This document shows, one piece after another, positions 7,509-59,900 of a stretch of DNA of 64,000 bases. Made by a program: the position numbers and the translations under genes. Location: the IMG/VR virus record IMGVR_UViG_3300042868_009074, positions 186,001 through 250,000 of that record; one strand, given 5' to 3'. Below the pieces are notes generated by a model that was given only the letters and a program-made list of their open reading frames with translations, was not told the DNA's origin and searched no databases. Each line of letters opens with the position of its first letter. Within the stretch, counting starts at the first letter, position 1.

Positions 7509-7568
7509 TTTATTTCTCCTTGTTTAAAGACTATCAATACTGAGTGGTATTTATAGCTATATAGTAAT

Positions 7569-9322: not shown

Positions 9323-9415
9323 GTTGCCTGATCCTTTTTAGTAGTTATAATGCTTACCTATTATATCATTGACTCATATGGTGATAGTGTATATTGCATG
9401 TGATATACTTGTTCT

Positions 9416-34310: not shown

Positions 34311-34336
34311 TCAATACCACCTACGGAAACTATTCT

Positions 34337-44382: not shown

Positions 44383-44826
44383 ATGTTTATAGGAAAAAAG
44401 TTTAAATCTTTTACAGTTAGCTTTTGTACTATTGGTGCTCTCGCTGCAATCAACTATACATTGATCCATAACCCTTTAGTGTTTGTCTTTACTATGATGT
44501 TACTGGTTCATGAACTAGGTCATTATCTTATTGCTAAACTAGCTAAAGCAGATGCATCTTATCCTTTCTTTATACCTCTTCCTTTTATAGGTATAGGTAT
44601 AACCAGAGTTAAAAATCTCTTACCCAAGCACAGAGCTTCCGTTGCTATTGCCGGAGTTCTGTTTTCTGCATTGTTTATTTTAAACGTTATTTTTAATAAC
44701 TTTATATATCATATGTTTACTTTTTCTTCTTTATTTGTTCTTTTGTTTCTGGAATTGTTCTTTAACTATTTCGGATCAGACGGTAATAAATACCGTCAAT
44801 CAAAACTTTCTTTGCTATCTTCCTAA
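44383..44826 (+). CDS. M50/site-2-protease-like membrane zinc metallopeptidase (short)
   Basis: LLVHELGHY, FIPLPFIG, VAIAG; multiple TM helices. Confidence 0.75.
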   Translation: MFIGKKFKSFTVSFCTIGALAAINYTLIHNPLVFVFTMMLLVHELGHYLIAKLAKADASYPFFIPLPFIGIGITRVKNLLPKHRASVAIAGVLFSALFILNVIFNNFIYHMFTFSSLFVLLFLELFFNYFGSDGNKYRQSKLSLLSS

Positions 44827-44850
44827 ACCAAAACAAAACATAAATCATCA

Positions 44851-45093
44851 TTGAACAGGAAAACCATGAATCAAAGCAACAAGGCCAAAGCTAATATGTT
44901 AGAAAACAAAATCAATAATTTCTTTGAAGAATCTTATTTTGATGTTCAAGGAATGACTACTAAGATTTCTTTTAATGAGACTCAACTTGTTCGTCTTATG
45001 ACTAAGATTAGTGTTGGTCTTGTGACTGTTTGGTGGTCATCGTTAGAACTCAAAACTCTGCTAAAAACTTATCAATTATCTAAGGGGCTTTAA
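44851..45093 (+). CDS. Small hypothetical protein
   Basis: AGGA before MNQSN. Confidence 0.6.
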   Translation: MNRKTMNQSNKAKANMLENKINNFFEESYFDVQGMTTKISFNETQLVRLMTKISVGLVTVWWSSLELKTLLKTYQLSKGL

Positions 45094-45485
45094 TGTCTGA
45101 ATATCCTGAACAAATTCCAAAGGAACAAAAGCCTTTGGATAAGTTTACCTTTTCTCTTAATCTTTCCAACAAAGTTAAAGAAGATCTAGAGTCTGAACTT
45201 TCTACAATAGAAGAGAGAATAAATTCTATTGTTAATAAGGTTACTGTTGACGGGATGCCTATACTAAAAGCTATTCTTCAAACCAGCCACGATAAAAAAG
45301 AACTTAAGCGTTTAGCTAAAGGTCTAGATAGAGTTGCTGATTTGATTGAAGGATCTGATCATATTAAAACTCGGTTAAATATAATTGATACCGCACATAA
45401 AGATCCTGATTGGTTCGCTTGGACCTTTGGTGATTTCTCTGAAGAAATCGACAAGCACATTGAATCTATTCTAGACGAAAGCTGA
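45093..45485 (+). CDS. Coiled-coil hypothetical protein
   Basis: TAATG coupling to the upstream gene. Confidence 0.7.
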   Translation: MSEYPEQIPKEQKPLDKFTFSLNLSNKVKEDLESELSTIEERINSIVNKVTVDGMPILKAILQTSHDKKELKRLAKGLDRVADLIEGSDHIKTRLNIIDTAHKDPDWFAWTFGDFSEEIDKHIESILDES

Positions 45486-45487: not shown

Positions 45488-47410
45488 ATGTCTAAAAATA
45501 TAACCTATTCTATTGAGCAAACAGAGTCAACTATTGTAGCTCGCTCTACTGTAAAATCTTTTAACTTAGATCATGTGACAGATAAAGATATTACTTCTTA
45601 TTATCGTCAGATTTCTAACCAGGCTTTATTTGACACCGGTCTTTTGCCCCTTAATGGAACTGGAATTCTTTCTATCCGTTCTGCAGGACGGCATACTCAG
45701 ATAGCTTTCCAGCATGCTCCAGCATTGGCTTACATTAACTGGGGTGCTAACGAAGGAGACCGAAACGCTAAAGCCTATTTGCTTGCTCAGCCTTATCGTA
45801 TTTGGGTAGCAGATCTTTTAGACGGCAATCTATACGGTGCTAGAATGTTCTATAGCCCTTATCCAATCAGCCATCCTGATCAGCCTCTTTATCATATCAA
45901 CCTTCCTAACACTAACTGCAAGGGTTATCGTGGTAATGGTGTAGGTTGGCAATGCTTGTATCACAATGAAGACTGGACTAACATTTCTTTTAACGATAAA
46001 GTTAATAAGTTGATTCAACGTTGTTCAGGCATTGAAGCATACAACGATGCTAACATGTCAGAGACTGATGGTCCTAGGTTTTATCGTGAAAACAATAAAC
46101 CAGAATACCTTTGGAACCCATCTGCTTGGCAAGAAAAATCTCAAGAAGAAGGATTAGACTGGACTCTTGATGAAGATATGTGGATTCCTATTCTTGTTAA
46201 AGATATGGATAACCAAGACAAGCACTACGATGATGGTCAACCATTAACATTTGCAATGGCTTTGTTAGGTAACTATAATTCTTACTACAATGATAACTAT
46301 CACCCTAAGCTTATCAACGCTTTTGCTCGTACTGATATTGATATTCCTACAGACCAAGTATTTAATGTCTTTGTACAAGCTCACAACTCTGCTAAAACTG
46401 AACCTCAAAAGCTAGATCAGTTTAATGCTGCTGCTTTAAGCAAGGTAAAGATTGCAGAAACTTTTGTACAACCTTCGCTATTCAATTCACCAGACGATGA
46501 TAATGATAACACGTTTACTTGCCCAGGATGTGAAGAATCTTATTCTGAAGATAATGAAGAGTTCTTTGCTGATCCTAAAGGATCTAACTGGTGTCAAAGT
46601 TGCTTCCAAGAAAATTGGGTTTATTGTGAAAACGTAGATACTTATCTTCATGCAGAAGATGATGATGCTGTTTACATGGAAGCTTATTCTTATTATGTAG
46701 ATGCCAAGAAAGCAACTATAAAAGAATGTAACCATTGCGACATGTCTTATTGGATCACTAAAGATTCTACTGAATCATTTCCGTTCTATCAGTTTCAATC
46801 GCAAAAAGAAGACGTTGATTTAGTTGATTGTTGTCCATCATGTTTTAACGAACAAGCAGCTGAACATCTTCCTGATCTTCTTCCTTCTGGATTAAACCCT
46901 TACAGTAAAAAGCCTGTTTACACTAAGAACCATGCTGTATGTTCTGGTTGTAATGTTGGTATATTTGTGGATGTTCCTGAGCTTGCTCACACTTATGTAA
47001 GCGTTCCTTCTTTGTTTCATCATAACGCTAACTTTTGGGAAGACATTGAAATTGATATTTCTACGTTTACTTTAGCCAGTCAAAAGTTTTGTTTACAATG
47101 TGCAAAGAAACAACACTATTGTCCTTCTGGACATTGGACTGACAAGAGTAATATTTCGATAATGCCTTTTGTCTCTACTCCTTTTGTTAATTCTAAAGGC
47201 GATGAAATAATTCTTAAAATAAAAGAAGTTTGTCAAGGATGTTTAAACTCTAAATATGATTTAGATGATCCTGTTAAATCTTTGTTTACTCATACTCATT
47301 ATTATTACAGAGCTTTGAGTTCAGTTTACTACGACCTTCATCCACAATATTCTACTACATTTGAATTGTTCAATACTGACGGTTCAGATTACAGTCCAGA
47401 ACCTTTTTAA
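45488..47410 (+). CDS. Prokaryotic E2-like (family D / PRTRC B-like) protein with C-terminal multi-zinc-finger region
   Basis: DTGLLP, LAQPYRIW, DQPLYHINLPNTN...GVGWQCL; many CxxC pairs after residue ~340. Confidence 0.7.
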   Translation: MSKNITYSIEQTESTIVARSTVKSFNLDHVTDKDITSYYRQISNQALFDTGLLPLNGTGILSIRSAGRHTQIAFQHAPALAYINWGANEGDRNAKAYLLAQPYRIWVADLLDGNLYGARMFYSPYPISHPDQPLYHINLPNTNCKGYRGNGVGWQCLYHNEDWTNISFNDKVNKLIQRCSGIEAYNDANMSETDGPRFYRENNKPEYLWNPSAWQEKSQEEGLDWTLDEDMWIPILVKDMDNQDKHYDDGQPLTFAMALLGNYNSYYNDNYHPKLINAFARTDIDIPTDQVFNVFVQAHNSAKTEPQKLDQFNAAALSKVKIAETFVQPSLFNSPDDDNDNTFTCPGCEESYSEDNEEFFADPKGSNWCQSCFQENWVYCENVDTYLHAEDDDAVYMEAYSYYVDAKKATIKECNHCDMSYWITKDSTESFPFYQFQSQKEDVDLVDCCPSCFNEQAAEHLPDLLPSGLNPYSKKPVYTKNHAVCSGCNVGIFVDVPELAHTYVSVPSLFHHNANFWEDIEIDISTFTLASQKFCLQCAKKQHYCPSGHWTDKSNISIMPFVSTPFVNSKGDEIILKIKEVCQGCLNSKYDLDDPVKSLFTHTHYYYRALSSVYYDLHPQYSTTFELFNTDGSDYSPEPF

Positions 47411-47450: not shown

Positions 47451-49151
47451 ATGTCTAATAAAATTAAAGAACCAGTTACTCTAGATGATCTAGACTACTT
47501 CTGGATGACTAACGGAGCACCATGTTTTATGGCTGACCGTGAAGACATCTGTGAAGTAGTTGAGTCTCTAGGTTTTCAGATCTATTACTTAATCGCTGAT
47601 CTTGCAATTAATAAAGAAGTTAAAGGCAAAGATAAACAATTTAAAGAAATTACGTGGATTGAGACTACTCATAAAGCCCGAGTTCTTAAAGTTGTTAATA
47701 ACATTATTGGTCGTTCTGTTTCAGAAACAGATGATGAATTTGGACAAGACATTCTTTCTTCAGTAGAAGAATCTGCAACATACAACATGCCAAAGATTCC
47801 TAAAGTTATTGTTAAAAAGTTAGACGAGTTCTTTAGATTAGTGCACGCTCAGCACGGCACCGAGTCTATAGTCATCTTAACTTTTGATCCTAATGTAAAC
47901 ACATCTGATGGTTGGGGTGTCTTGGTTCCTGAACAGACTAATACTCCAGCACACTGCAAGTATGACGCTGAGTCCATTGTTGATCTTAAACCTGACCATG
48001 TAATCATTGTTGGCTCAGTCCACAGTCATCCTGAGATGGCAGCATACGCCTCTGGGACCGATCATGAGGACCAAGCAGACTTCGATGGGGTCCACATCAC
48101 CTACGGCTGGATGAAGACCAAGAACGGTGGAGCTACTGAGTATCATGCAGAGATGCAAATGAACGGTACTGCTTATCTTTTGAATATTGAAGATGTCTTT
48201 GAAGACACTACTGAAATTAAAGATCCAGATCCTCAAGTTGTTGAATGGTCCGGCAAAGTAAAAAAAGTATCCCCCCCGCCGTACAAAGCGGGGGTTACAC
48301 CACAGGCTACCCAAGCCCTGCCAACTGGTCAGGCTCAGGGTCTAGTGTCGGGACATACGGGCACTACTGGGATTAACTATTACGGTGGACGTTCTGTTCC
48401 ATCTCGTAAGCAAACAATCCCTTTTCAAATGGATGAATACGATGGTCAACTCGTTGCCGAGATTGACACTTCTTCAAATGTTTCAATGACCTGTCCTTCT
48501 TGTGAACTATATCTATTTAAAGCAGACGTTGAAGGACATGGCTTTTGTCCAGCTTGTGACATCCCATTAGCTCCTAAAAATGCTTCTCTTAAATCTATTG
48601 AATTTGCAGTTAATTATCATCTTGTCAATCGTTCTAAAGAAACAGGATGTGCCTATTACCTTTGGTGTAAAGACGATAAGAATGAAAACTTTCTTATTCA
48701 AATTAAACCAGATGAATTAGATAGTCGTGACATTTCAATCGGTTCTAGAATAGATGAATTCGAAGAGTATGGTGATGCTGATCAAGCTGGCTTATCTCTT
48801 CTTAAAGAATCAGATGGCTTGTTCTTTTATGCAGAAGACGTAACATTATGTTGTGCGTGTCCTGCTGACAGAGCATGGACTGAATGCAAGTGTGCACCTA
48901 CGGTTTACTGGGAAGACATTGAAAGATTTGAAATAGCAGCAAACAATACAGAAAAATATGTTGCTGATTCAATTTGTCAAACATGTGCTTTCTATTGTCT
49001 TCCTGAATGTGATTCTTATAGAAACAACATTATTGAATTTATTTCTACACAACAGTTGCCATCCAAAGCAATAGATGGCTGTGATTCTTGGGTTGATTTT
49101 TCCAAGGTTGCTAACGATATAGATAGCGGTATTTATGACACATACAGATAA
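47451..49151 (+). CDS. JAB/MPN metalloisopeptidase (PRTRC A-like) with C-terminal zinc fingers
   Basis: GTESIV (catalytic E), VPEQ, GSVHSHPEMAAYASGTD (HxH-x7-S-x2-D), DGVHITYG. Confidence 0.9.
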   Translation: MSNKIKEPVTLDDLDYFWMTNGAPCFMADREDICEVVESLGFQIYYLIADLAINKEVKGKDKQFKEITWIETTHKARVLKVVNNIIGRSVSETDDEFGQDILSSVEESATYNMPKIPKVIVKKLDEFFRLVHAQHGTESIVILTFDPNVNTSDGWGVLVPEQTNTPAHCKYDAESIVDLKPDHVIIVGSVHSHPEMAAYASGTDHEDQADFDGVHITYGWMKTKNGGATEYHAEMQMNGTAYLLNIEDVFEDTTEIKDPDPQVVEWSGKVKKVSPPPYKAGVTPQATQALPTGQAQGLVSGHTGTTGINYYGGRSVPSRKQTIPFQMDEYDGQLVAEIDTSSNVSMTCPSCELYLFKADVEGHGFCPACDIPLAPKNASLKSIEFAVNYHLVNRSKETGCAYYLWCKDDKNENFLIQIKPDELDSRDISIGSRIDEFEEYGDADQAGLSLLKESDGLFFYAEDVTLCCACPADRAWTECKCAPTVYWEDIERFEIAANNTEKYVADSICQTCAFYCLPECDSYRNNIIEFISTQQLPSKAIDGCDSWVDFSKVANDIDSGIYDTYR

Positions 49152-49899
49152 TTCTCCTAGAAGAGTAGTTCTTGTTGGTGCCGGTGGCATTGGCACTTGG
49201 CTTGCTGAAGGCGTAGCTCGAATGCTAGAGTGGAAATTTCCTGGCTCTGCATTGATTCTTGTTGACGGTGATAACTATGAACAAAAGAATTTAGAACGTC
49301 AGAACTTTAAACAGATGGGCAACAAGGCTTCAGTTAAAGCTTTGGAACTTACTCCTTCATTTCCAAACACAATGTTTATTCCAGTCCCTAAATGGGTTGT
49401 TGATGATAACTTTGCTGGAGTAACAGATGAAGAATCTCCAAAGATTAAAGCTTCTGAGCTAATCACTGAAGGAGATATTGTTCTTGCAGTAGTAGATAAC
49501 TTTGCTGCACGCAAAATCTTGTTCGATGCGGCATCTAAACTTGATAATGTTGACGTCTTTACTGGTGGCAATGATGATGACCTTTTTGGTTCTATCTATC
49601 ATTATCAACGCAGAGATGCTAAAGATGTTACTGAGCATCCAGTAACCTTTCATCCAGAGTATGAGAGTCCACCAGATAAAAACCCCGGTGAGATGTCTTG
49701 TCAAGAACGAGCAGAAGTAAATGGTGGAACCCAGTTACTTGCAACTAACATGGCAGTTGCAGCTTTTATTCTTGGTCGTATTCACAAAACAATTGTGAAC
49801 AACCAAAACCCCGAAGAGTCTGAGATTTACTTTGATCTCGGCGTCGGTAAATCAGAACCATATAACCGTATGGTTCAATTAGTACCACTACCAGTATAA
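49135..49899 (+). CDS. ThiF/E1-like adenylating enzyme
   Basis: VVLVGAGGIG, LVDGDNYEQKNLERQ, NKA, AVVDNFAAR, candidate catalytic Cys in EMSCQE, ATNMAVA. Confidence 0.93.
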   Translation: MTHTDNSPRRVVLVGAGGIGTWLAEGVARMLEWKFPGSALILVDGDNYEQKNLERQNFKQMGNKASVKALELTPSFPNTMFIPVPKWVVDDNFAGVTDEESPKIKASELITEGDIVLAVVDNFAARKILFDAASKLDNVDVFTGGNDDDLFGSIYHYQRRDAKDVTEHPVTFHPEYESPPDKNPGEMSCQERAEVNGGTQLLATNMAVAAFILGRIHKTIVNNQNPEESEIYFDLGVGKSEPYNRMVQLVPLPV

Positions 49900-49916: not shown

Positions 49917-50168
49917 ATGAATAATCAATCATCATCAGCTTCGGCTGCGTCTTCTTCTGGCGTAGCTAACGTCAGATTTGGCGTTTACAGTCAGCCAACA
50001 CCAGTTGCTGGCAAAAGCGTTAAAGAAGTTCGCGAGCAATTCAGCAAGTTGTGGGGAATCCCCAACGACGCAATTGCTTACAAGGGCAAGGATAAGCTTG
50101 ACGAAGACTATGTCGTTCAGCCAAGTGACAACCTTGAGTTCCATCGCCGTGCCGGCGAAAAGGGCTAA
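49917..50168 (+). CDS. Ubiquitin-like beta-grasp protein (PRTRC C-like)
   Basis: GKSVKEVRE...DYVVQPSDNLEFHRRAGEKG; C-terminal Gly; AGGAG RBS. Confidence 0.85.
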   Translation: MNNQSSSASAASSSGVANVRFGVYSQPTPVAGKSVKEVREQFSKLWGIPNDAIAYKGKDKLDEDYVVQPSDNLEFHRRAGEKG

Positions 50169-50284: not shown

Positions 50285-51907
50285 ATGCTATTCTCCCAAA
50301 TTAAACTTGGAGTTCCTTCTATTTGGCTTAAGACTACTGATTATGCTAGAACCACAGAGTCTCTTATCAAGTTTAATCAACGCTCTTTCTACACTATAGA
50401 TCCCCTTAAAGGTTATGCTAAGTTCATAGACAATGAATGGAAGAGCATACTAGTCCAAATGCCTGATCCTCAAAACCCAGAGGAACTTCGTGAGACTACA
50501 ACTTTTGATTTTACTGTAGCTTACACTCATCTTCTTGACCAGTTAAACACTAACAAAGAATCTGCTACATTTTTATATTCTGTTTACACTAAACCAGAAG
50601 CAATGATGGAAATGTTTTCTGGATTGATCTCCATGAACAACACTCAATATCGTTCTGCTTTTTGGTCTGATGATCTTGAACAAATGCCTCTTCAGTTGGT
50701 GTTTATGTCTTGGTTTGATTGTCCAGAAGATTTTAAAAACATGTTTTATCTTTCTGATTTTGAAGAACCAAACCTTGAAGAACTCGCAACTATTATTAAT
50801 CACATAGATGATTCTTCTGGTAACACTCTTGTTGATCAGGGATCTCTTCCTGCAATTGCTAAAGCCGCAATTGGTTTGACAGAATCTGATTTCATTAATG
50901 TTTGTCTTAATTCTGTTCTTGAAAATGGAAAGATTGATCCAGATTATATTTATAATTTTAAGATGGCCGACATTAAAAAGAATGGCATTCTTGAAATCAT
51001 TCGTCCTAAGACTACCTTTGATAATATTGGTGGTCTTGATAACATTAAAGAACTTATTACTCGCAACGCTGTTCTTTGGCATAATCCAGAAAAAGCTGCT
51101 GAGTTTGGGATTAGTCCTATCCGTCGTATTCTTATGGTTGGCGTTCCCGGTACTGGTAAATCAGCTATTTGTGAAGCAACTGCTAATGCACTAGGGCTTG
51201 ATCTTGCTCGTACTGGTGTTAGCCAAGTTATGAATTCTTACATTGGTCAATCAGAGCAAAACATGCGTACTGTCTTTAAACAGATTAGTGTTATGGCTCC
51301 GTTGTGCGTTTGGATTGATGAGTTTGGTCGAGACATGTCTGGTGGTCAAAGCTCTGGACAAGTCGACGGCGGTACTACTGACCGTGTTCATGGTGAGTTC
51401 CTTACTGGTTTACAAGAGCTTCCTGATAACGTCTTCTTGATGTGTGCTGCCAATCAGCTTGATCATCTTAAACCAGAAATGCTACGAGCTGATCGTTTTG
51501 ACAAGATCATGTTTGTTGGTCTTCCTTCTTTTAATGAGCGTATGTCCATCCTTGATATTTATCTTCAAGGAATTAAAACAGATCACGTTTTTGATCTTGA
51601 AGAGCTAGCTCATGCTACTCAATACTTTACTGGTGCAGAGATGAAGTCTTTGATTAAAGAAGTTAAGTTTAACGTTTCTTCTGCCGAACTTCGTCCAATC
51701 AATACCCGTGATATTCTGGCTTATGCTCCGAAGCAGAGAAATATTCTTTGGAATAAGAGTCGTCAAATGATTCAAGATCTCTACGTCACTGCTATAGAGC
51801 AATGGGACTGGGCCTCGACAGATCAATTTAATGATGCTAAACTAATAGTTAGCGGTGAATCTAAAACAACAAATGCACCTGCAAAAGCCAGTGGCTTTAA
51901 ATGGTAA
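50285..51907 (+). CDS. AAA+ ATPase (Ycf46/Cdc48-clade, degenerate N-terminal module plus intact C-terminal module)
   Basis: FDNIGGLDNIK, GVPGTGKS, YIGQSE, WIDEFG, AANQ, MLRADRFD, FTGAEM. Confidence 0.92.
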   Translation: MLFSQIKLGVPSIWLKTTDYARTTESLIKFNQRSFYTIDPLKGYAKFIDNEWKSILVQMPDPQNPEELRETTTFDFTVAYTHLLDQLNTNKESATFLYSVYTKPEAMMEMFSGLISMNNTQYRSAFWSDDLEQMPLQLVFMSWFDCPEDFKNMFYLSDFEEPNLEELATIINHIDDSSGNTLVDQGSLPAIAKAAIGLTESDFINVCLNSVLENGKIDPDYIYNFKMADIKKNGILEIIRPKTTFDNIGGLDNIKELITRNAVLWHNPEKAAEFGISPIRRILMVGVPGTGKSAICEATANALGLDLARTGVSQVMNSYIGQSEQNMRTVFKQISVMAPLCVWIDEFGRDMSGGQSSGQVDGGTTDRVHGEFLTGLQELPDNVFLMCAANQLDHLKPEMLRADRFDKIMFVGLPSFNERMSILDIYLQGIKTDHVFDLEELAHATQYFTGAEMKSLIKEVKFNVSSAELRPINTRDILAYAPKQRNILWNKSRQMIQDLYVTAIEQWDWASTDQFNDAKLIVSGESKTTNAPAKASGFKW

Positions 51908-51927: not shown

Positions 51928-52554
51928 ATGTCTGAAGAATTTTCTTATCACGATGATTCATACAACCCTGAAGCTGCAATTGATGCATCTACTGGTGAAG
52001 TTCAAAAAACTTATGATAAAGATCTATACAAGAAATGGTTTCGTTCTAAAACTCAGAGTGGATTTCTTTCAATCCGTCCTTGGTTTCAGGGTCTAAAGCT
52101 TCGTATTGATATTGGTAAGACTTCTTCAGACGGCAAGCTTATGAGCAGCACTAATGTGTTTGTTGATGTAGTAGACTTTGGTGCCTATCTCAAGGCTATT
52201 ACTACAGGCACTGCAGCTCTTGGCTATCCAGCCAATGAAAGAACTGGTGTACCTAGTGCTGAAGGATTTGTTTCTTATGGTGGTGCTAAAATAAATGGCA
52301 AACCAGTAAGTAGAATATTTAAATCTCATTATTGGCAAAATGGAGATGTCTTTGATTCTAACAACTTTGTATTTAAGACTGGTCACTTTGAAGCTCGTAT
52401 GGCTGAGTCCGGAGCTTTCATTCCAGATATGAAGAATATTATTTCTTTTGATTCAATTAAAGTAACTCGTCAAGATATCCACTCTATTTCTTATATGGTT
52501 GATCTGGCTATGGCTTCTCATGTAGCTAATAAATCAGATTGGTATGAGGTCTGA
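51928..52554 (+). CDS. Hypothetical protein
   Basis: AAAGGA RBS; 208 aa. Confidence 0.8.
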   Translation: MSEEFSYHDDSYNPEAAIDASTGEVQKTYDKDLYKKWFRSKTQSGFLSIRPWFQGLKLRIDIGKTSSDGKLMSSTNVFVDVVDFGAYLKAITTGTAALGYPANERTGVPSAEGFVSYGGAKINGKPVSRIFKSHYWQNGDVFDSNNFVFKTGHFEARMAESGAFIPDMKNIISFDSIKVTRQDIHSISYMVDLAMASHVANKSDWYEV

Positions 52555-52954
52555 TATGGAAAATATAGAAGAAGAATTTCTTGAACTTCCTCCTTTGACT
52601 GAGATAGAAGAACTTAAAAGACTTCTTAACGAATTAGTTATAGGACTTGCTGCTAAGTTTGATGAGAAAATAAATCAGATTGAAAAGACCATGGAAGATT
52701 ATGAGAAGCAGTCTGCTACTCTTATAGTTGGTTTTGGTGAACAAGCAGTATTCCTTGAGGCCTTAATGGGTCAACTCCAGTTTGCTACATCTGAAGCACA
52801 AAAAGATTTTCACGATACTCTTAACAACAGTAGAAAACAAATGTTGAACATTATGAAAGATGGTGCTCGTGATCTCGTGGCCGATGAAAATGAAGGACTT
52901 GCCTCAGCCATTGAAGACGTGGTTGACTCAAAGTCAACTGACACCCCCAATTAA
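52544..52954 (+). CDS. Acidic coiled-coil protein
   Basis: GAGG RBS; heptad pattern. Confidence 0.75.
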   Translation: MRSDMENIEEEFLELPPLTEIEELKRLLNELVIGLAAKFDEKINQIEKTMEDYEKQSATLIVGFGEQAVFLEALMGQLQFATSEAQKDFHDTLNNSRKQMLNIMKDGARDLVADENEGLASAIEDVVDSKSTDTPN

Positions 52955-53147
52955 TTCTGCTTGTGTTCTGTTGGTAGATAAAGAATCTTATCCATTCATT
53001 AATACACTACCATCTTTAAATAAGATTTATCCTTTTGTTAAATCTTTGCATCCTGACATGCTTTCCCTGCATGTTATATCTTCGTCCGTTTCTTTCTTCA
53101 TTAAAAATAATGTCTTAGAACTACACACAGTAGAGGTAATAAAATGA
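52860..53147 (+). CDS. Small hypothetical protein (start uncertain)
   Basis: Fills the gap and ends in an ATGA overlap with the next gene. Confidence 0.5.
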   Translation: MVLVISWPMKMKDLPQPLKTWLTQSQLTPPINSACVLLVDKESYPFINTLPSLNKIYPFVKSLHPDMLSLHVISSSVSFFIKNNVLELHTVEVIK

Positions 53148-53764
53148 TTACAGTCATTGATACTTTAGAACAGTTTAATGATCGTTTTATTAATTTTAAC
53201 GATTCTCAAAGAACTGATTTCTTTCTTCCTTTAGACTCAATGGTTAATGATGCCCTTGTCAATAACCGGATTGAAGAACTTAGAATAATATTAGAAGATA
53301 ATGATAATTCTTATTCTTATTATGAGGATTTGTATAACTTAAATTACAGTCCTTTAACAGAACACCAGTACATATCTAATTATTCTTTACTCTATCCTTA
53401 TTCTAAAAATAATTTTATTAAACAGTTCTTTAATGATATGCTTCCTAGCTTATCTAATCATGTTTTATCTTACATGAAAACAACTTCTAGAATTGTCCAG
53501 ATTGGTGCTGGAAAAGGCAAAGGCCTTATGCTTAATCCTGTTTCTTTCACCGAAGACGATCTTCAGTTTTTAAAACCATTACAATATCAGCATGTTATTG
53601 AAGCTATGGTTAACGTCACAGCTTTAGTTAATAACCAACAAGCAGATATTAAATTCCTTCTTGACCAAAATCAAGAACTACAAACTACTAATACTATTTT
53701 ATCCCTTGAACACCAAGCAATGAATAACGCTCGAGTTCAGGATTATCTAACTACTTGGAGATAA
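53144..53764 (+). CDS. Hypothetical protein with C-terminal coiled coil
   Basis: GAGG RBS; 206 aa. Confidence 0.75.
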   Translation: MITVIDTLEQFNDRFINFNDSQRTDFFLPLDSMVNDALVNNRIEELRIILEDNDNSYSYYEDLYNLNYSPLTEHQYISNYSLLYPYSKNNFIKQFFNDMLPSLSNHVLSYMKTTSRIVQIGAGKGKGLMLNPVSFTEDDLQFLKPLQYQHVIEAMVNVTALVNNQQADIKFLLDQNQELQTTNTILSLEHQAMNNARVQDYLTTWR

Positions 53765-54669
53765 CTACTATGTCTAATTTCATTGTTCAAGATGAAAAAA
53801 CTATTCTCTATCCTACTCAACCTTGGGATGGCTCAATAGAAAACTGCATTATTCTTATTGAAGACAAAGATATGATTCCTGGCACTGTGCGCTGGGATAC
53901 TACAGCTACTGGGTTTATGTTTTATAATCTTCCAGAATATTCTACAATTTCTTCTATTAGCGATAGCCTTCTTCAAGTATACAATAAGTTTGTAATTCCT
54001 GGAAAATTTGCCAATGTCCCTTCTCCCAATGACAGCATTCCTAACTGGGCAACTTTTAACCCTGAAGACAAATCTTTCTATTTAAGATTTGATTTAGTTT
54101 TTAATATTAGAACAGACTATTCTTCTGTTTCTACTTGTAAGTTTTACACTAACCCTCATAGCAGCTTTTCTTCAGATGAATACCAGTATGCTAATAAATC
54201 AAAAGGCGACATTTGCTCTGAGCCAGTACTAAATGCCAAGTCTAGCGGCGTTGCTTATTGCCCTTATTACCAAAACTTGTTCGCTGATATGCCAGCACAT
54301 TCTTGCCAAGGTTACTCTGCTGACAGTAAGATTCTTTCTTTGACAAATCTTTCTTCTAGGCATTCTGAAAATAAAATTAATATTACTGTTACTCAATCCA
54401 GAATGGATGCAGGTAAAACGGTCAATATTTTATTTAAAGATCAAATAAATAACACTGTATTTCATGACATTAAATTTAGTTCTTTAGATAAAGACCAATT
54501 AGATTCCATACCTACTATGGTTCAATCTATCCTTGATGAAATATTAGAATCATATAAAAACGATTTTAATATTGATACACAAGATGTTATTTCGCAAGTA
54601 GTTAAAATAGAAAGAAAAAGTTTCATATCTTCTCTTATAGAAAGAGAGAATCAAGATGTCTACATTTAA
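53755..54669 (+). CDS. Hypothetical protein with Cys cluster
   Basis: 304 aa; CKFY...ICSE...YCPYY...SCQGY. Confidence 0.75.
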   Translation: MEITTMSNFIVQDEKTILYPTQPWDGSIENCIILIEDKDMIPGTVRWDTTATGFMFYNLPEYSTISSISDSLLQVYNKFVIPGKFANVPSPNDSIPNWATFNPEDKSFYLRFDLVFNIRTDYSSVSTCKFYTNPHSSFSSDEYQYANKSKGDICSEPVLNAKSSGVAYCPYYQNLFADMPAHSCQGYSADSKILSLTNLSSRHSENKINITVTQSRMDAGKTVNILFKDQINNTVFHDIKFSSLDKDQLDSIPTMVQSILDEILESYKNDFNIDTQDVISQVVKIERKSFISSLIERENQDVYI

Positions 54670-55810
54670 TATCTATAAACAATATGATGATAACCTTTAT
54701 TATCTATCTTTGATTTCTGATCGTTTTCAAAGACAAAATTCTGAATACTACAGATTCTCATCTCATCTTGGAATTATTTCTTTAGATCAAGTTCAAGAAA
54801 ATATTAATTCGTTTCCAAAGAACCGGTTAATAGATTCTCTTAGCGGTCCTTATCCAATAGCTGTTCGTTATATGGATAAAGGAGTATTCCTTGTTGAAAG
54901 GCCTCCTTTCCAAATGAAGATTGACTACTCACCTACTAAGAGCAATCGTGTTCGCCGTCCAATTAAACCAGTTACAGTCTGGGTCCCCTGGACTGTTTCT
55001 GTTTATAATTTATCTGCAGATGTAAACACAATGATCAACTCTTACAAGATATATTTTAACGACTCTTCTATATCTTCATTAGAAGATCGTTTAGTTACTA
55101 ACTATTTTTGTAATGTTTATGGTGATGGCAAAATTTGTTTAGGCCGTTCTGCTCAAGGTATCCAAGATAAATTACAAAATAATCAGATTACAGACTTTGC
55201 TACTTTACATTCTTATATGTTTAATGAATACTTTTCTGGTGGATGGAATACTGACTTAGGTTCTAATTTGTATTCTTTAATGAGAAGTATAGATTCTTCT
55301 TACATGATCAAAGATTACATTAATCTTTCTGATTCCTCAATCGATGCAAGAGCTAAAAAATTAAAGTTGAAGTTCTTTAAATCTCATCATCCTGCTTATG
55401 AGATAGCTAACTCTTTTTATAATCTTTCTCTTTTATCTCTTGAAGAAACTTTGAACATGGTTACTGAAGTAAAACAAAAGCATTTTCATCAAGTTAAACC
55501 AATTAGTTCTATTGCAGCTACTGACGTAGATAGTTCTGTAGATCATTATGTTGATCCAATAAATTTTACAGATAATTATTCTAACAATTATTGTGTTGTA
55601 AAACTTGTTTTAGATAACAGTCTTAACGCTACTAATCTTAATAGCCGTGATATCCCTTCTGAAATATTGCAGTTCTTTAAAGAAAACTCCTACGATATTA
55701 TGGATCAAGTTTACGAAAGCTATAATTCTAGAAACTCAATGTCTATTGAATTAAATTATCAAATTCCTCTTATTTCTCCTTCTACAATTGAGGAGCAGGT
55801 GAATGTATAA
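54656..55810 (+). CDS. Prokaryotic E2-like (family D) paralogue 2
   Basis: LVERPP, VWVPWTV, NYFCNVYGDGKICLG, WNTDL. Confidence 0.7.
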   Translation: MSTFNIYKQYDDNLYYLSLISDRFQRQNSEYYRFSSHLGIISLDQVQENINSFPKNRLIDSLSGPYPIAVRYMDKGVFLVERPPFQMKIDYSPTKSNRVRRPIKPVTVWVPWTVSVYNLSADVNTMINSYKIYFNDSSISSLEDRLVTNYFCNVYGDGKICLGRSAQGIQDKLQNNQITDFATLHSYMFNEYFSGGWNTDLGSNLYSLMRSIDSSYMIKDYINLSDSSIDARAKKLKLKFFKSHHPAYEIANSFYNLSLLSLEETLNMVTEVKQKHFHQVKPISSIAATDVDSSVDHYVDPINFTDNYSNNYCVVKLVLDNSLNATNLNSRDIPSEILQFFKENSYDIMDQVYESYNSRNSMSIELNYQIPLISPSTIEEQVNV

Positions 55811-56873
55811 CTTAACAAACTTTAAAAGTACTTCTTCAAATTACGAAACAACCAATGCAGGAATTGTTCATTCTCTTACCGCATTTGATTCCTCTGGCAT
55901 AAGCCATGTTATAGAAGACCAAAACGAATTTGAATTTACCTACTACAATGAGTGGATGAAAGATAATATCTTTATTTCTCTTTATCGAGATTCAAAAGAT
56001 ACTTACAATTACAATTCTAATTCCATTATTCCACCAGGTCTTATCCATATTGATAAAAACTTTTTAGTTTTTGAGAAGCCTCCTACTCATAAGCTAATTA
56101 ATATTTATAACCAGTATCTTCATGACATAAATGATGATACAAGATTATACTCTTACTACCTACCTATTCCTTGGCAAGTTTATATTGTAGAATTTGATCC
56201 TAATAATAATAGGACTTGTTTAGTTAAAATGTTCTTTTCCAAATCAAGCTTAGTTAATTTTGATCAACAGCTTTTTCTTCCTCCTATCCCTAACTTTTAT
56301 GTTAACGGATTATTGTGTCGCCCGTTCTTTAATTCCATGGATGATATAGAAAGATATTCTGCTGATGTTCCTGGAATCATGGAATCAGCTTACGATTGGG
56401 TTTGGGCTAGTAACTTTAACTTAGATCTTTCAGAAACTATTTCTTCTGTTTATGTTCAAAAGAATCCTATTCAGTTATCTCGTGGCATAACTGACAGTTC
56501 TCACCTTAGTTATAAGCTTGGCATGAGTGTCATAAACCAGCTTTACACACATTGGGAATCATTACCGTTATCTGAAGTTACTTCTTTTAATTGGCCAAAT
56601 CCAGCTTTTGCAATGACTTTTCAAGAAGATCTTGCTACTGTAGATGTCCATGATTTATTTGATCAATGGTGTGAGAATAACAGTATATCCATAGATTCAG
56701 ACGAAGAGCATGATGAATACTACCAATCTGATAGTTTCAGATCATCTCTTCCTAATCCTAAAACTATCTCTAAGACATTTAAGGATATTATGAATTATTG
56801 CATTAGCCATACTTCTTTCCCTGTTTCTAAGAAAAAACTCAAAAATATTCTTGTTTCTCGAGCATCAGAATAA
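55803..56873 (+). CDS. Prokaryotic E2-like (family D) paralogue 3
   Basis: IIPPGL, VFEKPP, LPIPWQVY, LFLPPIPNFYVNGLLC, SNFNLDL. Confidence 0.7.
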   Translation: MYNLTNFKSTSSNYETTNAGIVHSLTAFDSSGISHVIEDQNEFEFTYYNEWMKDNIFISLYRDSKDTYNYNSNSIIPPGLIHIDKNFLVFEKPPTHKLINIYNQYLHDINDDTRLYSYYLPIPWQVYIVEFDPNNNRTCLVKMFFSKSSLVNFDQQLFLPPIPNFYVNGLLCRPFFNSMDDIERYSADVPGIMESAYDWVWASNFNLDLSETISSVYVQKNPIQLSRGITDSSHLSYKLGMSVINQLYTHWESLPLSEVTSFNWPNPAFAMTFQEDLATVDVHDLFDQWCENNSISIDSDEEHDEYYQSDSFRSSLPNPKTISKTFKDIMNYCISHTSFPVSKKKLKNILVSRASE

Positions 56874-56879
56874 AACGAC

Positions 56880-56908
56880 TTGACAAATCTATTATGCTAT
56901 TATATACT
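56880..56908 (+). promoter_or_regulatory. Sigma70/SigA-type promoter
   Basis: TTGACA-17 nt-TATACT. Confidence 0.75.
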
Positions 56909-56936
56909 TATATAAACTTTAAAAAAGGTATTAAAA

Positions 56937-57245
56937 ATGGCAAAACAAAAGATGACAGAACCAGTATTCACTAGATCTGAAATAGCAGAAATACTTAATG
57001 TATCCACCCTCACCATAGCCAATAGGGAAAAGAACAAAAAATACCCTGAGCCAAAAAGAGATATGAATAACTATAGAATATATAGTTTGAATGATGTTTT
57101 CAATCTTCAACTTATTACCTATAACCATATCAACCCAAAGCCTGTGATATCTATTCTTTTTGATAAAGGGTATAAAGACAGTAAGCATCTAGGTGAAATG
57201 ATAGACAATGTTCTATCTCGTAGGAGCAACGCAAATGCAAAATGA
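56937..57245 (+). CDS. MerR-like HTH DNA-binding protein
   Basis: FTRSEIAEILNVSTLTIANRE...PKRDMNNYRIYSLNDV. Confidence 0.85.
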   Translation: MAKQKMTEPVFTRSEIAEILNVSTLTIANREKNKKYPEPKRDMNNYRIYSLNDVFNLQLITYNHINPKPVISILFDKGYKDSKHLGEMIDNVLSRRSNANAK

Positions 57246-57465
57246 TAAAGAAGAAAAGTTTTCACTAGTAGACGATGTAGATGATAATGTATCTACTGAT
57301 AATATTACAGAATTAAAATCTGGAATATTTAATCTATTTGTTAACTTGTACGACCATTTGTCCATAGACGTTGGTCCTCGTGATGCTATAATCGAATCAA
57401 CTAATTATCTACTTTATATTGTAGATACATTCAAACAAGCTCTTGAAAATGAAAATCAAGAATAA
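57208..57465 (+). CDS. Small acidic hypothetical protein
   Basis: AGGAG RBS before MQNDK. Confidence 0.65.
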   Translation: MFYLVGATQMQNDKEEKFSLVDDVDDNVSTDNITELKSGIFNLFVNLYDHLSIDVGPRDAIIESTNYLLYIVDTFKQALENENQE

Positions 57466-57495: not shown

Positions 57496-57939
57496 ATGTT
57501 AGACGCAAAGAATGTAGTAACCATCTCAGGTGGTATAGTTTCAGAGCCAGAAATAATCAATGATAAAATAGCTAAGTTTAGAGTAGCTATTGATTACGCT
57601 GGTTCAGAAAAAGGCGGAGATAATAACTCAGGTTATTTCGACGTAGTATACTATCTCAAAGAAGGTACAAACTTCGCTTCAAAGAATGCACAGTTCTTGC
57701 ATTCTCAAATCACAGGTGGAAAACTCAAGAAGGGTTCACCACTTCAAATCCTCGGACGCTTAGTGCAAGAGCGTTGGCAACAAGATGGAGCTAACCGCTC
57801 TAAGGTTGTTATCGTAGCTGAATCAGTGTCCTACGCTGCATCTAACTACTCAAAGACTAATGAGTCAGGTGAAGCACCAAAGACTGCAGAAGCCGGATCC
57901 CCAGCATCTTCTTACTCTTCAGTACCTAACCAGTTTTAA
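57496..57939 (+). CDS. ssb: Single-stranded DNA-binding protein
   Basis: NVVTISGGI...EPE, LKKGSPLQILGRLVQERWQQDGANRSKVVIVAE, tail ending in F. Confidence 0.9.
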   Translation: MLDAKNVVTISGGIVSEPEIINDKIAKFRVAIDYAGSEKGGDNNSGYFDVVYYLKEGTNFASKNAQFLHSQITGGKLKKGSPLQILGRLVQERWQQDGANRSKVVIVAESVSYAASNYSKTNESGEAPKTAEAGSPASSYSSVPNQF

Positions 57940-58676
57940 TGGAGTCTGAGTTTAATCAGGATGATTTAGATTCTCTGATTAAAGAAGCTCTATCTGTTCC
58001 GGTAAACCCGCTGCATCCTAAATCTGGGATGCATGTGGGTTTTATGGAGACTGATATGTTGGAGCTGTTAAGCGGTCATCTTTCTAATAAGATTCCGCTT
58101 TCAGCTATATCAGAGATCTATCAAGATTTGCGATTAGATCTTTTATCTAGAAAATCTAATCATCAAATAAAAGACTTGCATACAGTTATACTTAATTGTC
58201 GCAAATGTGAGATGCAACAAACTACTCCGGAACTTCCTAAGTGGAATGTAAAAAACCCAGATGTTTTATTCATTACTGATAATCCTTCTTTAGATTCTGA
58301 TTCAGTTTCTTTCTTTCTTTCTGCTTTGAAAGAAGCCGGTTTTGAATCATCTAATGTTTGTTTAACTTACGTTAACCGTTGCCCAGTCAAAAGAAAATAT
58401 ACCAATCAAGAAGTTTTTAATTGTTCTCCTTATCTTCATAATGAGATTCAACTATTAAACCCTAAATTGATTGTAACGTTAGGTTCAGTGCCTCTAATCT
58501 CATTACTTGGATTAGATGTAAAACTTAAAGAGTATAGGGGTAATTTAACTTGGTTAGGATACTGGCCAATCATTCCCACATATTCACCAATATACGCTGT
58601 AAGAAATGGTCAGAATTTTCAAGACCAATTTTTATCAGACATTAAATCAGCACATAACTTTTCAACCAAGGATTAA
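57939..58676 (+). CDS. Family-4 uracil-DNA glycosylase-like protein (catalytic motifs altered)
   Basis: NCRKC, YVNRCP, NCSPYLHNEIQLLNPKLIVTLG, PTYSP. Confidence 0.8.
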   Translation: MESEFNQDDLDSLIKEALSVPVNPLHPKSGMHVGFMETDMLELLSGHLSNKIPLSAISEIYQDLRLDLLSRKSNHQIKDLHTVILNCRKCEMQQTTPELPKWNVKNPDVLFITDNPSLDSDSVSFFLSALKEAGFESSNVCLTYVNRCPVKRKYTNQEVFNCSPYLHNEIQLLNPKLIVTLGSVPLISLLGLDVKLKEYRGNLTWLGYWPIIPTYSPIYAVRNGQNFQDQFLSDIKSAHNFSTKD

Positions 58677-59544: not shown

Positions 59545-59619
59545 GCCTCTATAGTTAAAGGGATATAACAAGGGACTTCTAATCCCTCGTTCTAGGTTCG
59601 AGTCCTAGTGGAGGCGCCA
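59545..59619 (+). tRNA. tRNA-Arg(TCT)
   Basis: Acceptor GCCTCTA/TGGAGGC+G, encoded CCA, loop CTTCTAA, GTTCGAGTC. Confidence 0.93.
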
Positions 59620-59900
59620 TGTCAGTCAGCGAACACTATTTTATAGACAGTTCTTTTATTCAACACATTCATTGGTATGAAGATACCAGTAACATGATTA
59701 TTACTTTTGCTACTAATTCTGTTTGGGTATATTACGATGTGCCTAAAGAAGTTTTTATTAACATGACTAAATCTAAATCAGTTGGTTCTGTATTTAACAA
59801 AGAAGTTAGAAACAAATTTCGAGCAGAAGTTTTATTTAAATTAGGTAAAACTTCAAATATCATTTATTCTAAAGGCGAAGAAATTGTCCAAGAAACGTAG
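59619..59900 (+). CDS. KTSC-domain protein
   Basis: SSFIQHIHW...YYDVPKEVF...SKSVGSVFNKEVR. Confidence 0.8.
   Translation: MSVSEHYFIDSSFIQHIHWYEDTSNMIITFATNSVWVYYDVPKEVFINMTKSKSVGSVFNKEVRNKFRAEVLFKLGKTSNIIYSKGEEIVQET

What the first reader, a model, noticed from the sequence alone, without database searches (positions are those of the whole stretch)
54656..56873. Two further tandem E2-like paralogues, giving three E2s for one E1/Ubl
Seen: both ORFs share an E[RK]PP...[VI]PW...N.Y..G..C...N.DL pattern, partly echoed in 45488, and each keeps the candidate catalytic Cys (KICLG, LLCRP). They lie in the same gene run, which ends at a new promoter at 56880. Inference: one E1 feeding several E2s is a eukaryote-like fan-out that could give different substrate specificities. 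The unknown ORFs in between (51928-54669) are candidate adaptors, E3s or substrates.
Basis: partly seen in the sequence, partly recalled or inferred. Interest (0 to 1): 0.75.

Follow-up and report, generated by a model that had tools for sequence, protein, structure and literature searches.

The report
Paired E2-like enzymes in jumbo phage
Two neighbouring genes of a roughly 200-kb lake-water phage encode very diverged ubiquitin-conjugating (E2)-type proteins that probably work as a pair, inside a conserved phage gene block that also carries an E1, a small ubiquitin-like protein, a JAB peptidase, an unfolding ATPase and, nearby, a proteasome-like peptidase.

The parts
54656..55810 (+). ORF1, 384 aa: diverged Prok-E2_D-like (UBC-fold) protein. 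Core is about residues 55-215. Invariant Asn153 (55112-55114) and Cys161 (55136-55138). N- and C-terminal extensions pack together in the model.
55803..56873 (+). ORF2, 356 aa: paralogue of ORF1 and the better conserved of the two. Core is about residues 66-225. Invariant Asn164 (56292-56294) and Cys172 (56316-56318).
   Evidence: 98.8% against the ORF1 family; 23 of 64 family members hit PF14460; predicted heterodimer with ORF1.
45488..47410 (+). E2Zn, 640 aa. Very conserved N-terminal 300 aa: a beta-beta-beta-alpha module followed by a probable E2-like core with LPN and invariant Cys144, Cys156 and Cys179. Variable C-terminal half carries several CxxC pairs (zinc-ribbon-like). Candidate third E2; which Cys is catalytic is unresolved.
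47451..49151 (+). JAB/JAMM metallopeptidase, 566 aa, with an intact HxH-x7-S-xx-D motif and a Cys-rich C-terminal half.
   Evidence: Prok-JAB, E 1.1e-5, over cut-off; weak PRTRC_A; motif read.
49135..49899 (+). Minimal ThiF-type E1 adenylating enzyme, 254 aa, with a GAGGIG motif and a single Cys at position 189.
   Evidence: ThiF, E 3.6e-13; best NCBIfam match PRTRC_ThiF, 3e-7, far below its cut-off.
49917..50168 (+). Candidate ubiquitin-like protein, 83 aa, ending ...RRAGEKG directly before the stop. The C-terminal tail is invariant in four distant relatives.
   Evidence: 84% mean column identity, invariant C-terminus; nearest ESM Atlas clusters ThiS/SAMP2, score 0.94, 204-208 shared features. 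No Pfam hit. Fold not modelled here.
50285..51907 (+). Classical-clade AAA+ ATPase, 540 aa, most similar to CDC48 / proteasome-activating nucleotidase.
   Evidence: AAA, 3.4e-24; CDC48 1.9e-34, PAN 8.8e-34, all far below equivalog cut-offs.
51928..52954 (+). Two conserved genes of unknown function (208 aa and 136 aa), present in nearly every related locus searched.
   Evidence: No family hits. The 208-aa protein is not E2-like by hhalign; the 136-aa protein was not compared.
53144..54669 (+). Two faster-evolving genes of unknown function (206 aa and 304 aa), syntenic but detectable only in closer relatives.
   Evidence: Not E2-like.
56880..56908 (+). Sigma-70-like promoter consensus match in the 63-nt gap after ORF2. 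Function unverified.
44383..45485 (+). Conserved upstream genes of the block: a small membrane protein with a weak M50-peptidase match (147 aa), an 80-aa ORF and a 130-aa protein.
   Evidence: Peptidase_M50, E 0.002, below cut-off; synteny.

Best explanation
ORF1 and ORF2 are anciently duplicated, strongly diverged members of the prokaryotic E2 (UBC-fold) lineage typified by Prok-E2_D / PRTRC system protein B. Each keeps the Asn-x7-Cys active-site loop.

They most likely assemble into a pseudo-symmetric heterodimer that leaves both Cys loops free. This pair would act as a conjugating enzyme in a phage-encoded ubiquitin-like modification pathway. The proposed steps are:
1. The neighbouring ThiF-type E1 adenylates the C-terminal Gly83 of the 83-aa ThiS-like protein.
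2. The Ubl is passed as a thioester to the E2-like cysteines. These are the E2Zn protein and/or the ORF1-ORF2 pair.
3. The Ubl is attached to phage or host proteins.
4. The JAB peptidase reverses or edits the mark.
5. The AAA+ ATPase, and possibly the proteasome-like peptidase a few kb downstream, act on the marked proteins.

Shown here: paralogy, fold class, motif register with Prok-E2_D, invariance of Asn and Cys, strict synteny across a deep phage lineage, and a supportive complex model. Inferred only: thioester chemistry, which E2 is charged, the targets, and any link to the ATPase or peptidase.
For: Paralogy:
- hhalign of the two families gives 98.8%, E 5e-17.
- Nine invariant columns across 61 sequences.

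Fold:
- The AF2 model has pLDDT 82.9.
- Foldseek against AFDB clusters finds 'PRTRC system protein B' (E 6e-5 and 7.8e-3) and a 'UBC core domain' protein (E 7e-3).
- An ESM Atlas Prok-E2_D cluster matches with TM 0.57 by the hit and rmsd 2.8 over 171 residues.

Sequence:
- PF14460 is hit by 8 of 62 ORF1-family and 23 of 64 ORF2-family members.
- In six-frame search of the phage itself, PF14460 hits exactly the ORF1 N153-C161 segment.
- The joint core profile against 10 bona fide Prok-E2_D proteins gives 93.6%, E 2.1e-7, with Asn and Cys aligned.

Context:
- E1, JAB, AAA and a Gly-ended ThiS-like protein lie in the same block.
- The block order is conserved in the 36 IMG/VR loci and the other related contigs wherever the locus is long enough, with ORF1 always immediately upstream of ORF2.

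Heterodimer:
- Score 0.69 in three runs against best control 0.00. The mark was reached by 58 of 80 solved complexes and 2 of 110 mismatched pairs. My own alignments were used, so these counts hold only roughly.
- 146-152 confident contacts on homologous surfaces of the two chains. The Asn/Cys loops are not in the interface.

Coding:
- Contigs about 90% identical from freshwater RNA libraries differ from ORF1 mostly at third codon positions. By my own count over the listed table, this is 18 of 25 differences.
Against: - No biochemical evidence exists for this family or for its PRTRC relatives.
- Foldseek against PDB with the whole model found nothing. A profile search of PDB sequences also found nothing.
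- Neither ORF passes Pfam's PF14460 cut-off.
- The His after the Cys that is invariant in Prok-E2_D (FSH) is replaced by N-x-D.
- ORF2's own structure and the Ubl's structure were not modelled.
- E1-E2 and E2-Ubl contacts were not tested.
- Paralogues descended from a homodimer can score as a heterodimer, and homodimers were not tested.
- Exposure of the Cys could not be measured.
Confidence: 0.6

Rival explanations
1. One reading: three independent E2s are charged by one E1 and each serves a different substrate set (a fan-out). ORF1 and ORF2 would act separately.
For: - All three proteins keep invariant Cys residues.
- ORF1 and ORF2 have different, fast-evolving N- and C-terminal extensions that could recognise targets.
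- E2Zn carries its own variable zinc-ribbon region.
Against: - ORF1 and ORF2 are never seen apart and overlap at stop and start.
- The complex model supports a heterodimer through homologous surfaces (score 0.69 against best control 0.00; 58 of 80 solved complexes and 2 of 110 mismatched pairs reached the mark).
- There is no evidence on substrates at all.
Confidence: 0.2
2. The proteins have the E2 fold but do not carry a thioester. They would be UEV/RWD-like Ubl-binding or scaffolding subunits, for example of the ATPase, the JAB peptidase or E2Zn, or an E3-like adaptor for the conserved E2Zn protein.
For: - UEV, Fts and Vps23/Tsg101 folds are among the structural matches.
- ORF1 evolves fast on a long stem, as expected of an adaptor.
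- E2Zn is much more conserved (67% against 18-27% mean column identity) and could be the real catalytic E2.
Against: - Asn and Cys are invariant in both families across about 60 diverse homologues each. They align with the invariant Asn/Cys of Prok-E2_D.
- From my own knowledge, non-catalytic UEVs have lost the Cys.
Confidence: 0.1
3. The proteins are thiol enzymes, or replication or host-takeover factors, unrelated to Ubl transfer. Their place in the block would reflect only co-expression with neighbouring early/replication genes (SSB, UDG).
For: - No direct link to the E1 or Ubl was tested.
- Four unrelated genes separate them from the E1/Ubl/AAA genes.
- The block abuts SSB and UDG.
Against: - Independent sequence, structure and language-model searches all converge on Prok-E2_D / UBC.
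- In bacteria, bona fide Prok-E2_D sits next to ThiF and Prok_Ub.
- No conserved His or other catalytic partner for a hydrolase was seen.
Confidence: 0.1

Closest known systems
Prok-E2_D (Pfam PF14460) = PRTRC system protein B (TIGR03737), of the ThiF-related cassettes on integrative/conjugative elements
   Same: - UBC-like core with an Asn-x7-Cys loop in register (hhalign 93.6%).
- Foldseek match to PRTRC protein B.
- Partners of the same kinds: a ThiF-type E1, a small Ubl, and JAB (the phage JAB and E1 give their best, though weak, NCBIfam hits to PRTRC_A and PRTRC_ThiF).
- It is borne by a mobile element and lies near an SSB gene.
- I found no functional study of it; the papers found use 'PRTRC' mostly as a gene-annotation label.
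   Different: - The phage proteins are below Pfam and NCBIfam cut-offs.
- They are 350-500 aa with extra N- and C-terminal parts, against about 240 aa.
- They are duplicated in tandem, and a third Zn-ribbon-bearing copy is present.
- The invariant His after the Cys (FSH) is replaced by N-x-D.
- No PRTRC_E or Prok_Ub (PF14454) match appears among the block proteins scanned, which did not include the small ORFs.
- The block adds an AAA+ ATPase and lies near a proteasome-like peptidase.
Ubc13-Mms2/Uev1a type E2 heterodimer of eukaryotes
   Same: Two paralogous UBC-fold subunits are predicted to form one unit. UEV and Ubc13-Mms2 chains are among the fold matches.
   Different: - Both phage subunits keep the Cys and Asn, whereas (from my knowledge) UEVs lack the Cys.
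- The predicted interface is pseudo-symmetric and also uses the extra N- and C-terminal parts.
- There is no detectable sequence relationship beyond the fold.
Bacterial antiphage ubiquitination-like systems: BilABCD (types I and II), CBASS Cap2/Cap3, Bub
   Same: They combine E1, E2, Ubl and a JAB-type or other deconjugating peptidase in one operon (PMC10557695, PMC11601596, PMC10097602). BubCD and CdnG-E2 structures appear among the fold matches.
   Different: - Those are host defence operons; this block is a conserved gene set of a phage lineage.
- The E1 here is a minimal 254-aa ThiF, not a multidomain E1 or an E1-E2 fusion.
- The E2s belong to a different family (Prok-E2_D-like).
- There are three E2-like genes, an AAA+ ATPase and a proteasome-like peptidase.
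Lambdoid/T1 phage tail-assembly Ubl (TAPI) with JAB-NlpC/P60 (TAPK)
   Same: It is a phage-encoded beta-grasp protein with a conserved C-terminal Gly and a JAB peptidase (PMC1779556).
   Different: That system has no E1 and no E2 and lies in the tail gene cluster. The present block has an E1 and E2-like proteins and lies next to replication/repair genes.

Membership tests
UBC/E2 superfamily (fold level) | UBC alpha/beta fold: N-terminal helix, antiparallel beta-meander, Cys loop, C-terminal helices | tested here: met
   [not shown]
UBC/E2 superfamily (fold level) | Invariant catalytic Cys in the loop after the last meander strand, with the conserved Asn of HPN eight residues upstream | tested here: met
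   N153/C161 and N164/C172 are invariant in 62 and 64 homologues. In the model they lie between strand 145-148 and helix 165-174. The eight-residue spacing in classical E2s is from my own knowledge. The His and Pro of HPN are not conserved (LPN or xxN).
UBC/E2 superfamily (fold level) | Forms a thioester with a Ubl delivered by an E1 | not testable with these tools
   This needs biochemistry. Only gene context is available: E1, a Gly-ended Ubl and JAB in the same conserved block.
Pfam Prok-E2_D (PF14460) / PRTRC system protein B | Score above the curated cut-off (25 bits) | tested here: not met
   ORF1 scores 11.6 bits, E 0.01, on 33 residues only. ORF2 has no hit at E 0.1. Family members hit it only weakly (best E 4.5e-4). 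PRTRC_B is hit by 1 of 64 members at E 0.098.
Pfam Prok-E2_D (PF14460) / PRTRC system protein B | Homology detectable at profile level with the active-site loop in register | tested here: met
   hhalign of A5 against A7 (10 proteins scoring 108-134 bits on PF14460): 93.6%, E 2.1e-7, 119 columns, Asn and Cys aligned. Foldseek to PRTRC protein B, E 6e-5.
Pfam Prok-E2_D (PF14460) / PRTRC system protein B | Absolutely conserved His C-terminal to the Cys (described for the class 6d E2-like proteins in PMC1779556, which I take to correspond to this family; seen as FSH in A7) | tested here: not met
   H199 is invariant in A7. I read the corresponding region of the phage families as GGWN-x-DL / FN-x-DL, with invariant Asn and Asp and no invariant His. 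The hhalign alignment ends just before this motif, so the correspondence is by eye.
Pfam Prok-E2_D (PF14460) / PRTRC system protein B | PRTRC cassette context (PRTRC_E, Prok_Ub, ThiF and others) | tested here: inconclusive
   The bacterial cassette was verified in L023: SSB-DUF932-PRTRC_E-Prok_Ub-391 aa-Prok-E2_D-ThiF. The phage block has ThiF, JAB and a Ubl with only weak PRTRC_ThiF / PRTRC_A hits and no PRTRC_E or Prok_Ub hit among the proteins scanned.
Ubc13-UEV type heterodimer | Stable dimer of two UBC-fold paralogues | tested here: inconclusive
   The prediction supports binding: score 0.69 against best control 0.00. The mark was reached by 58 of 80 solved complexes and 2 of 110 mismatched pairs, counts that hold only roughly because my own alignments were used. 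This is a model, not a measurement, and homodimers were not tested.
Ubc13-UEV type heterodimer | One subunit is catalytically dead (no Cys) | tested here: not met
   Both families keep the Cys and the Asn invariant.
Bil / CBASS-Cap2 / Bub antiphage systems | Host defence-island operon with a multidomain E1 or an E1-E2 fusion | tested here: not met
   The record is a virus contig. The E1 is a 254-aa stand-alone ThiF. Its only link is a weak hit to 6A-MBL cap2_3, E 0.0091.

The most novel reading that the evidence does not exclude
A widespread lineage of roughly 200-kb freshwater jumbo phages carries its own ubiquitin-proteasome-like pathway. In this reading, a ThiS-like tag is activated by a minimal E1 and is transferred by a Zn-ribbon E2 and a heterodimeric two-Cys E2 (ORF1-ORF2) onto host or phage proteins. 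The tagged proteins are then unfolded by the phage CDC48/PAN-like ATPase and degraded by the phage proteasome-beta-like peptidase. The JAB protein would recycle the tag, as Rpn11 does. As far as my searches reach, this would be the first tag-and-degrade system described in a virus of prokaryotes.
Probability: 0.2. Interest if true: 0.9.

Novelty: new variant of a known kind. Interest (0 to 1): 0.72.

Why it matters
Ubiquitin-like conjugation in bacteria has so far been demonstrated as a host weapon against phages (Bil, CBASS Cap2, probably Bub). Here the machinery is a conserved part of a phage lineage. It comprises an E1, a Gly-ended Ubl, a JAB peptidase, three E2-like proteins and an AAA+ unfoldase, with a proteasome-like peptidase nearby. 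The phage's DNA is present in at least 24 lake-water metagenome runs.

If the pathway is active, it would show that viruses of prokaryotes, like eukaryotic viruses, use protein tagging to remodel their host or their own proteome.

It would also give an experimental handle on the uncharacterised PRTRC / Prok-E2_D systems of conjugative elements.

Finally, it would provide a natural example of a two-cysteine E2 heterodimer, and of an E2 lineage that works without the classical His.

Tried and rejected
Searches that found nothing:
- Pfam, PHROGs and NCBIfam scans of ORF1 and ORF2 alone.
- tblastn of ORF1, ORF2 and the E2Zn N-terminus against 50,697 deposited phage genomes.
- Foldseek against PDB with the whole ORF1 model: best E 0.08, unrelated folds. 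This is probably because the model has several parts.
- A profile of the ORF2 family against all PDB sequences: no hit even at E 10.

Searches with limited yield:
- The exhaustive profile search of 1.84 billion representatives found 1,610 clusters (664 at E 1e-10 or better). Only the best 150 are listed and all are close family members, so it gave the family's size but no bridge to named families.
- The bridge came instead from fetching bona fide PF14460 genes out of Bacteroidota genomes.
- MAG labels of related contigs point to four different phyla, so they are useless for the host.
- RNA evidence is thin. Only short contigs about 90% identical were found in two freshwater metatranscriptome libraries, and these may contain DNA.

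Ideas tested and rejected or left open:
- The intervening ORFs (208, 206 and 304 aa) were tested as possible extra E2 paralogues. hhalign probability was about 0.1% each, so this was rejected.
- A direct link of E2Zn to PRTRC E2s failed.
- A cysteine-protease or transglutaminase reading of the invariant Cys was considered and set aside. No invariant His exists, and the fold matches are UBC.

Papers: jumbo-phage reviews and searches on PRTRC, Prok-E2, and phage plus ubiquitin-like terms gave no description of such a phage module.
Full report
**What the window is**

The window is part of an IMG/VR virus record of 104,067 bp. The record is linear and CheckV estimates it at 49% complete, so the genome should be roughly 200 kb. 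Related contigs of 190-220 kb carry the same genes. The stretch is held by at least 24 lake-water metagenome runs. From about 40 kb onward nearly all genes lie on the + strand. A WhiB-type regulator at 42867-43274 hints at an actinobacterial host. WhiB is used as an actinophage marker in freshwater studies (PMC10914622). MAG labels of related contigs disagree across four phyla and give no help.

**The observation**

ORF1 (54656-55810, 384 aa) and ORF2 (55803-56873, 356 aa) exist as described, and every quoted motif is present. The ORF1 start overlaps the end of the preceding gene. The ORF2 start overlaps the end of ORF1 by 8 nt and follows a GAGGAG site.

The two proteins are only 21% identical (BLASTP E 5e-5). 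Each heads a large family: 104 and 137 clusters at 90% identity in the word-indexed search, and together 1,610 clusters at 50% identity in the exhaustive search. The two family profiles align with probability 98.8%, E 5e-17.

**What the proteins are**

No curated family passes threshold on either protein alone. Four independent routes nevertheless converge.

- **Structure.** An AlphaFold2 model of ORF1 built on 62 homologues has pLDDT 82.9. Foldseek against PDB with the whole multi-part model found nothing. An aligner that scans 48,161 PDB representatives without Foldseek returned UBC/E2/UEV chains for most of the top 50 matches.
  - These align 126-147 residues of roughly 150-residue E2s to model residues about 48-290.
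  - Foldseek against AFDB clusters gives 'PRTRC system protein B' (E 6e-5 and 7.8e-3) and a 'UBC core domain' protein (E 7e-3).
  - The ESM Atlas shape search gives a Prok-E2_D cluster (TM 0.57 by the hit, rmsd 2.8 over 171 residues).
- **Per-member Pfam scans.** PF14460 (Prok-E2_D) is by far the commonest weak hit. It is found in 8 of 62 ORF1-family and 23 of 64 ORF2-family members. In a six-frame scan of the phage itself it lands on ORF1 residues 143-175, exactly the Asn153-Cys161 loop.
- **A direct bridge.** I fetched ten bona fide PF14460 genes (108-134 bits) from Bacteroidota genomes. The joint phage core profile aligns to them with probability 93.6%, E 2.1e-7. The phage motif 'LPN-x-Y-x-[DN]-G-x-[IL]-C' lies on 'PFFN-x-Y-E-D-G-x-V-C-M-G', so the Asn and Cys columns coincide.
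- **Language-model neighbours.** For ORF2, 67 of the 100 nearest clusters fall in sets that carry PF14460.

The Asn-to-Cys distance is eight residues in ORF1, in ORF2 and in Prok-E2_D. This is the distance I recall between the Asn of HPN and the catalytic Cys in classical E2s (my knowledge, not re-measured here). In the model, both residues sit in the loop between the last meander strand (145-148) and the first long helix (165-174), where an E2 active site belongs.

**What they are not**

They are not members of Pfam Prok-E2_D in the strict sense. The cut-off is not reached. The His that is invariant after the Cys in that family (FSH, and PMC1779556 for class 6d) is replaced by an invariant N-x-D. 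They are also larger, at 350-500 aa. In the ORF1 model the N-terminal strands and helix pack with C-terminal elements.

**The third E2**

The 640-aa protein at 45488-47410 has an extremely conserved N-terminal 300 residues (67% mean column identity) and a variable Cys-rich C-terminal half with several CxxC pairs.

- Its family profile aligns to the ORF2 family over 105 columns, ending at the shared '...LY-x-x-x-LPN' (probability 76%, E 2.3e-5).
- Its model (pLDDT 83.3) has the same layout as ORF1: three strands plus a helix, then a meander, then helices.
- Its Atlas shape cluster contains 13% PF14460-annotated members (TM 0.71/0.61).
- A direct profile comparison with PRTRC E2s fails.

An insertion follows LPN, so I cannot say which of the invariant Cys144, Cys156 or Cys179 would be catalytic. 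'Three E2-like proteins' is thus two firm and one probable.

**Context**

The same run encodes the following:

- A JAB peptidase with an intact HxH-x7-S-xx-D motif.
- A 254-aa ThiF-type E1.
- An 83-aa protein whose tail ...RRAGEKG ends at the stop. The tail is invariant in four distant relatives, and the nearest Atlas clusters are ThiS/SAMP2.
- A CDC48/PAN-like AAA+ ATPase.
- Four conserved unknown genes.

HMM searches of the related loci (36 from IMG/VR, plus metagenome and MAG contigs) show the following order, wherever the locus is long enough:

(M50-like)-g130-E2Zn-JAB-E1-Ubl-AAA-g208-g136-(g206)-(g304)-ORF1-ORF2-...-SSB-UDG

ORF1 is always immediately upstream of ORF2, even where ORF1 is only about 22% identical to the window's copy. 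This is a lineage-defining block, not a patchy accessory gene.

The tree shows the ORF1 family as a 100/100 clade on a long stem. The ORF2 family is less diverged, and its monophyly is unresolved. Every phage sampled has both genes, so the duplication is old.

Bona fide Prok-E2_D genes in Bacteroidota sit in PRTRC cassettes: SSB-DUF932-PRTRC_E-Prok_Ub-391 aa-Prok-E2_D-ThiF. I found no functional study of these cassettes.

**An unexpected neighbour**

Just beyond the window's 3' end, the same genome encodes a 205-aa protein at G000:C1:11574-12176, on the same strand as the block. It starts MTTIIG..., which I read as a Thr right after the initiator Met. It passes Pfam's Proteasome cut-off (31.7 bits against 22.4). 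Highly conserved homologues (E 1e-74 to 1e-139) lie 3-9 kb downstream of ORF2 in 33 of the 42 loci searched.

**How ORF1 and ORF2 probably work**

A complex prediction with both family alignments supports binding. The score was 0.68-0.69 in three runs, against 0.00 for the best of three controls. The mark was reached by 58 of 80 solved complexes and 2 of 110 mismatched pairs in the tool's calibration, which holds only roughly because my own alignments were used.

The interface uses homologous segments of the two chains: ORF1 63-76, 139-142 and 182 against ORF2 70-84, 149-153 and 189. It also uses the terminal extensions. The Asn/Cys loops are left out of it. Together with the strict adjacency and the overlapping stop and start, this favours one heterodimeric E2 with two active-site loops over two independent E2s.

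The caveat is that paralogues of a homodimeric ancestor can give this result, and homodimers were not tested.

The most likely pathway is as follows:

1. The E1 adenylates Gly83 of the Ubl.
2. The Ubl is transferred to E2 cysteines.
3. It is conjugated to targets.
4. The JAB peptidase reverses the mark.

A link to the ATPase and the proteasome-like peptidase is an attractive but untested extension. Every step after 'these are E2-fold proteins in an E1/Ubl/JAB block' is inference.

**Expression and coding**

No RNA run holds the phage itself. Two freshwater metatranscriptome libraries contain 151-287-nt contigs about 90% identical to parts of ORF1, ORF2 and their neighbours. DNA carry-over cannot be excluded. 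By my own count over the listed table, 18 of the 25 differences inside ORF1 fall on third codon positions, as expected for a gene under purifying selection.

**Comparison with the known, and novelty**

- The closest family is Prok-E2_D / PRTRC-B, by homology at profile and fold level, although two membership criteria fail.
- The closest working analogy for the pair is Ubc13-UEV, but here both subunits keep the Cys.
- Bil, CBASS-Cap2 and Bub are host defence systems with different E1 and E2 architectures.
- The lambdoid TAPI/TAPK pair lacks both E1 and E2.
- Searches of the paper library, including two jumbo-phage reviews, found no description of a phage-borne E1/E2/Ubl/JAB module.

I rate it a new variant of a known kind. 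The E2 assignment and the count of three hold up (the third weakly). The independent fan-out is not supported by the predicted pairing, and the affinity is prokaryotic (PRTRC-like) rather than eukaryote-like.

Noticed in passing
Outside the window: G000:C1:11574-12176 (- strand of the record, same strand as the block; about 1.4-2.0 kb past window position 64000); L060:1486-2103(-): A 205-aa proteasome-beta/HslV-like Ntn peptidase that starts MTTIIG... PF00227 scores 31.7 bits, over the cut-off of 22.4. Very conserved homologues lie 3-9 kb downstream of ORF2 in 33 of 42 loci searched.
   Followed up: partly
window 42867-43274 (+): A WhiB-family transcription factor (PF02467, E 1.9e-14). This hints that the host is an actinobacterium. 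MAG bins of related contigs name four unrelated phyla.
   Followed up: partly
IMGVR_UViG_3300042868_009074 (267,766 bp): L024 (231803-252870) and L056 (16502-37341): One IMG/VR contig holds a copy of ORF2 100% identical to the window's, plus a second complete module whose ORF2 is only 27% identical. Either two related phages were joined in assembly, or one genome carries two modules.
   Followed up: no
L023 (G242:C2:108000-125000), about 4138-9663: A bacterial PRTRC cassette in a Bacteroidota genome: SSB, DUF932, PRTRC_E, Prok_Ub, a 391-aa unknown, Prok-E2_D and ThiF. Like the phage block, it lies beside an SSB gene. I found no functional study of PRTRC.
   Followed up: partly
[not shown]
   Followed up: no
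window 46500-47410 (E2Zn C-terminal half) and 48400-49151 (JAB C-terminal half): Both proteins carry several CxxC pairs (zinc-ribbon-like). In relatives the E2Zn protein varies from about 350 to 650 aa, apparently through this region.
   Followed up: no
window 34304-35917, 37337-38569, 7569-8990, 9416-10393, 41469-41951: Other notable phage genes: a subtilase (S8), a cytochrome P450, a ClpB-like AAA_2 ATPase, RecA and a DnaJ-type zinc-finger protein. The first 20 kb have higher G+C (0.40-0.44) than the rest (0.31-0.39).
   Followed up: no
window 53871-57300: Two freshwater metatranscriptome libraries contain short contigs about 90% identical to g304, ORF1, ORF2 and the next gene. They come from a close relative, and DNA contamination cannot be excluded.
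   Followed up: partly
window 57496-58676 and 59619-59900: SSB, a UDG-superfamily protein and a KTSC-domain protein follow the block in the same order in all relatives.
   Followed up: no
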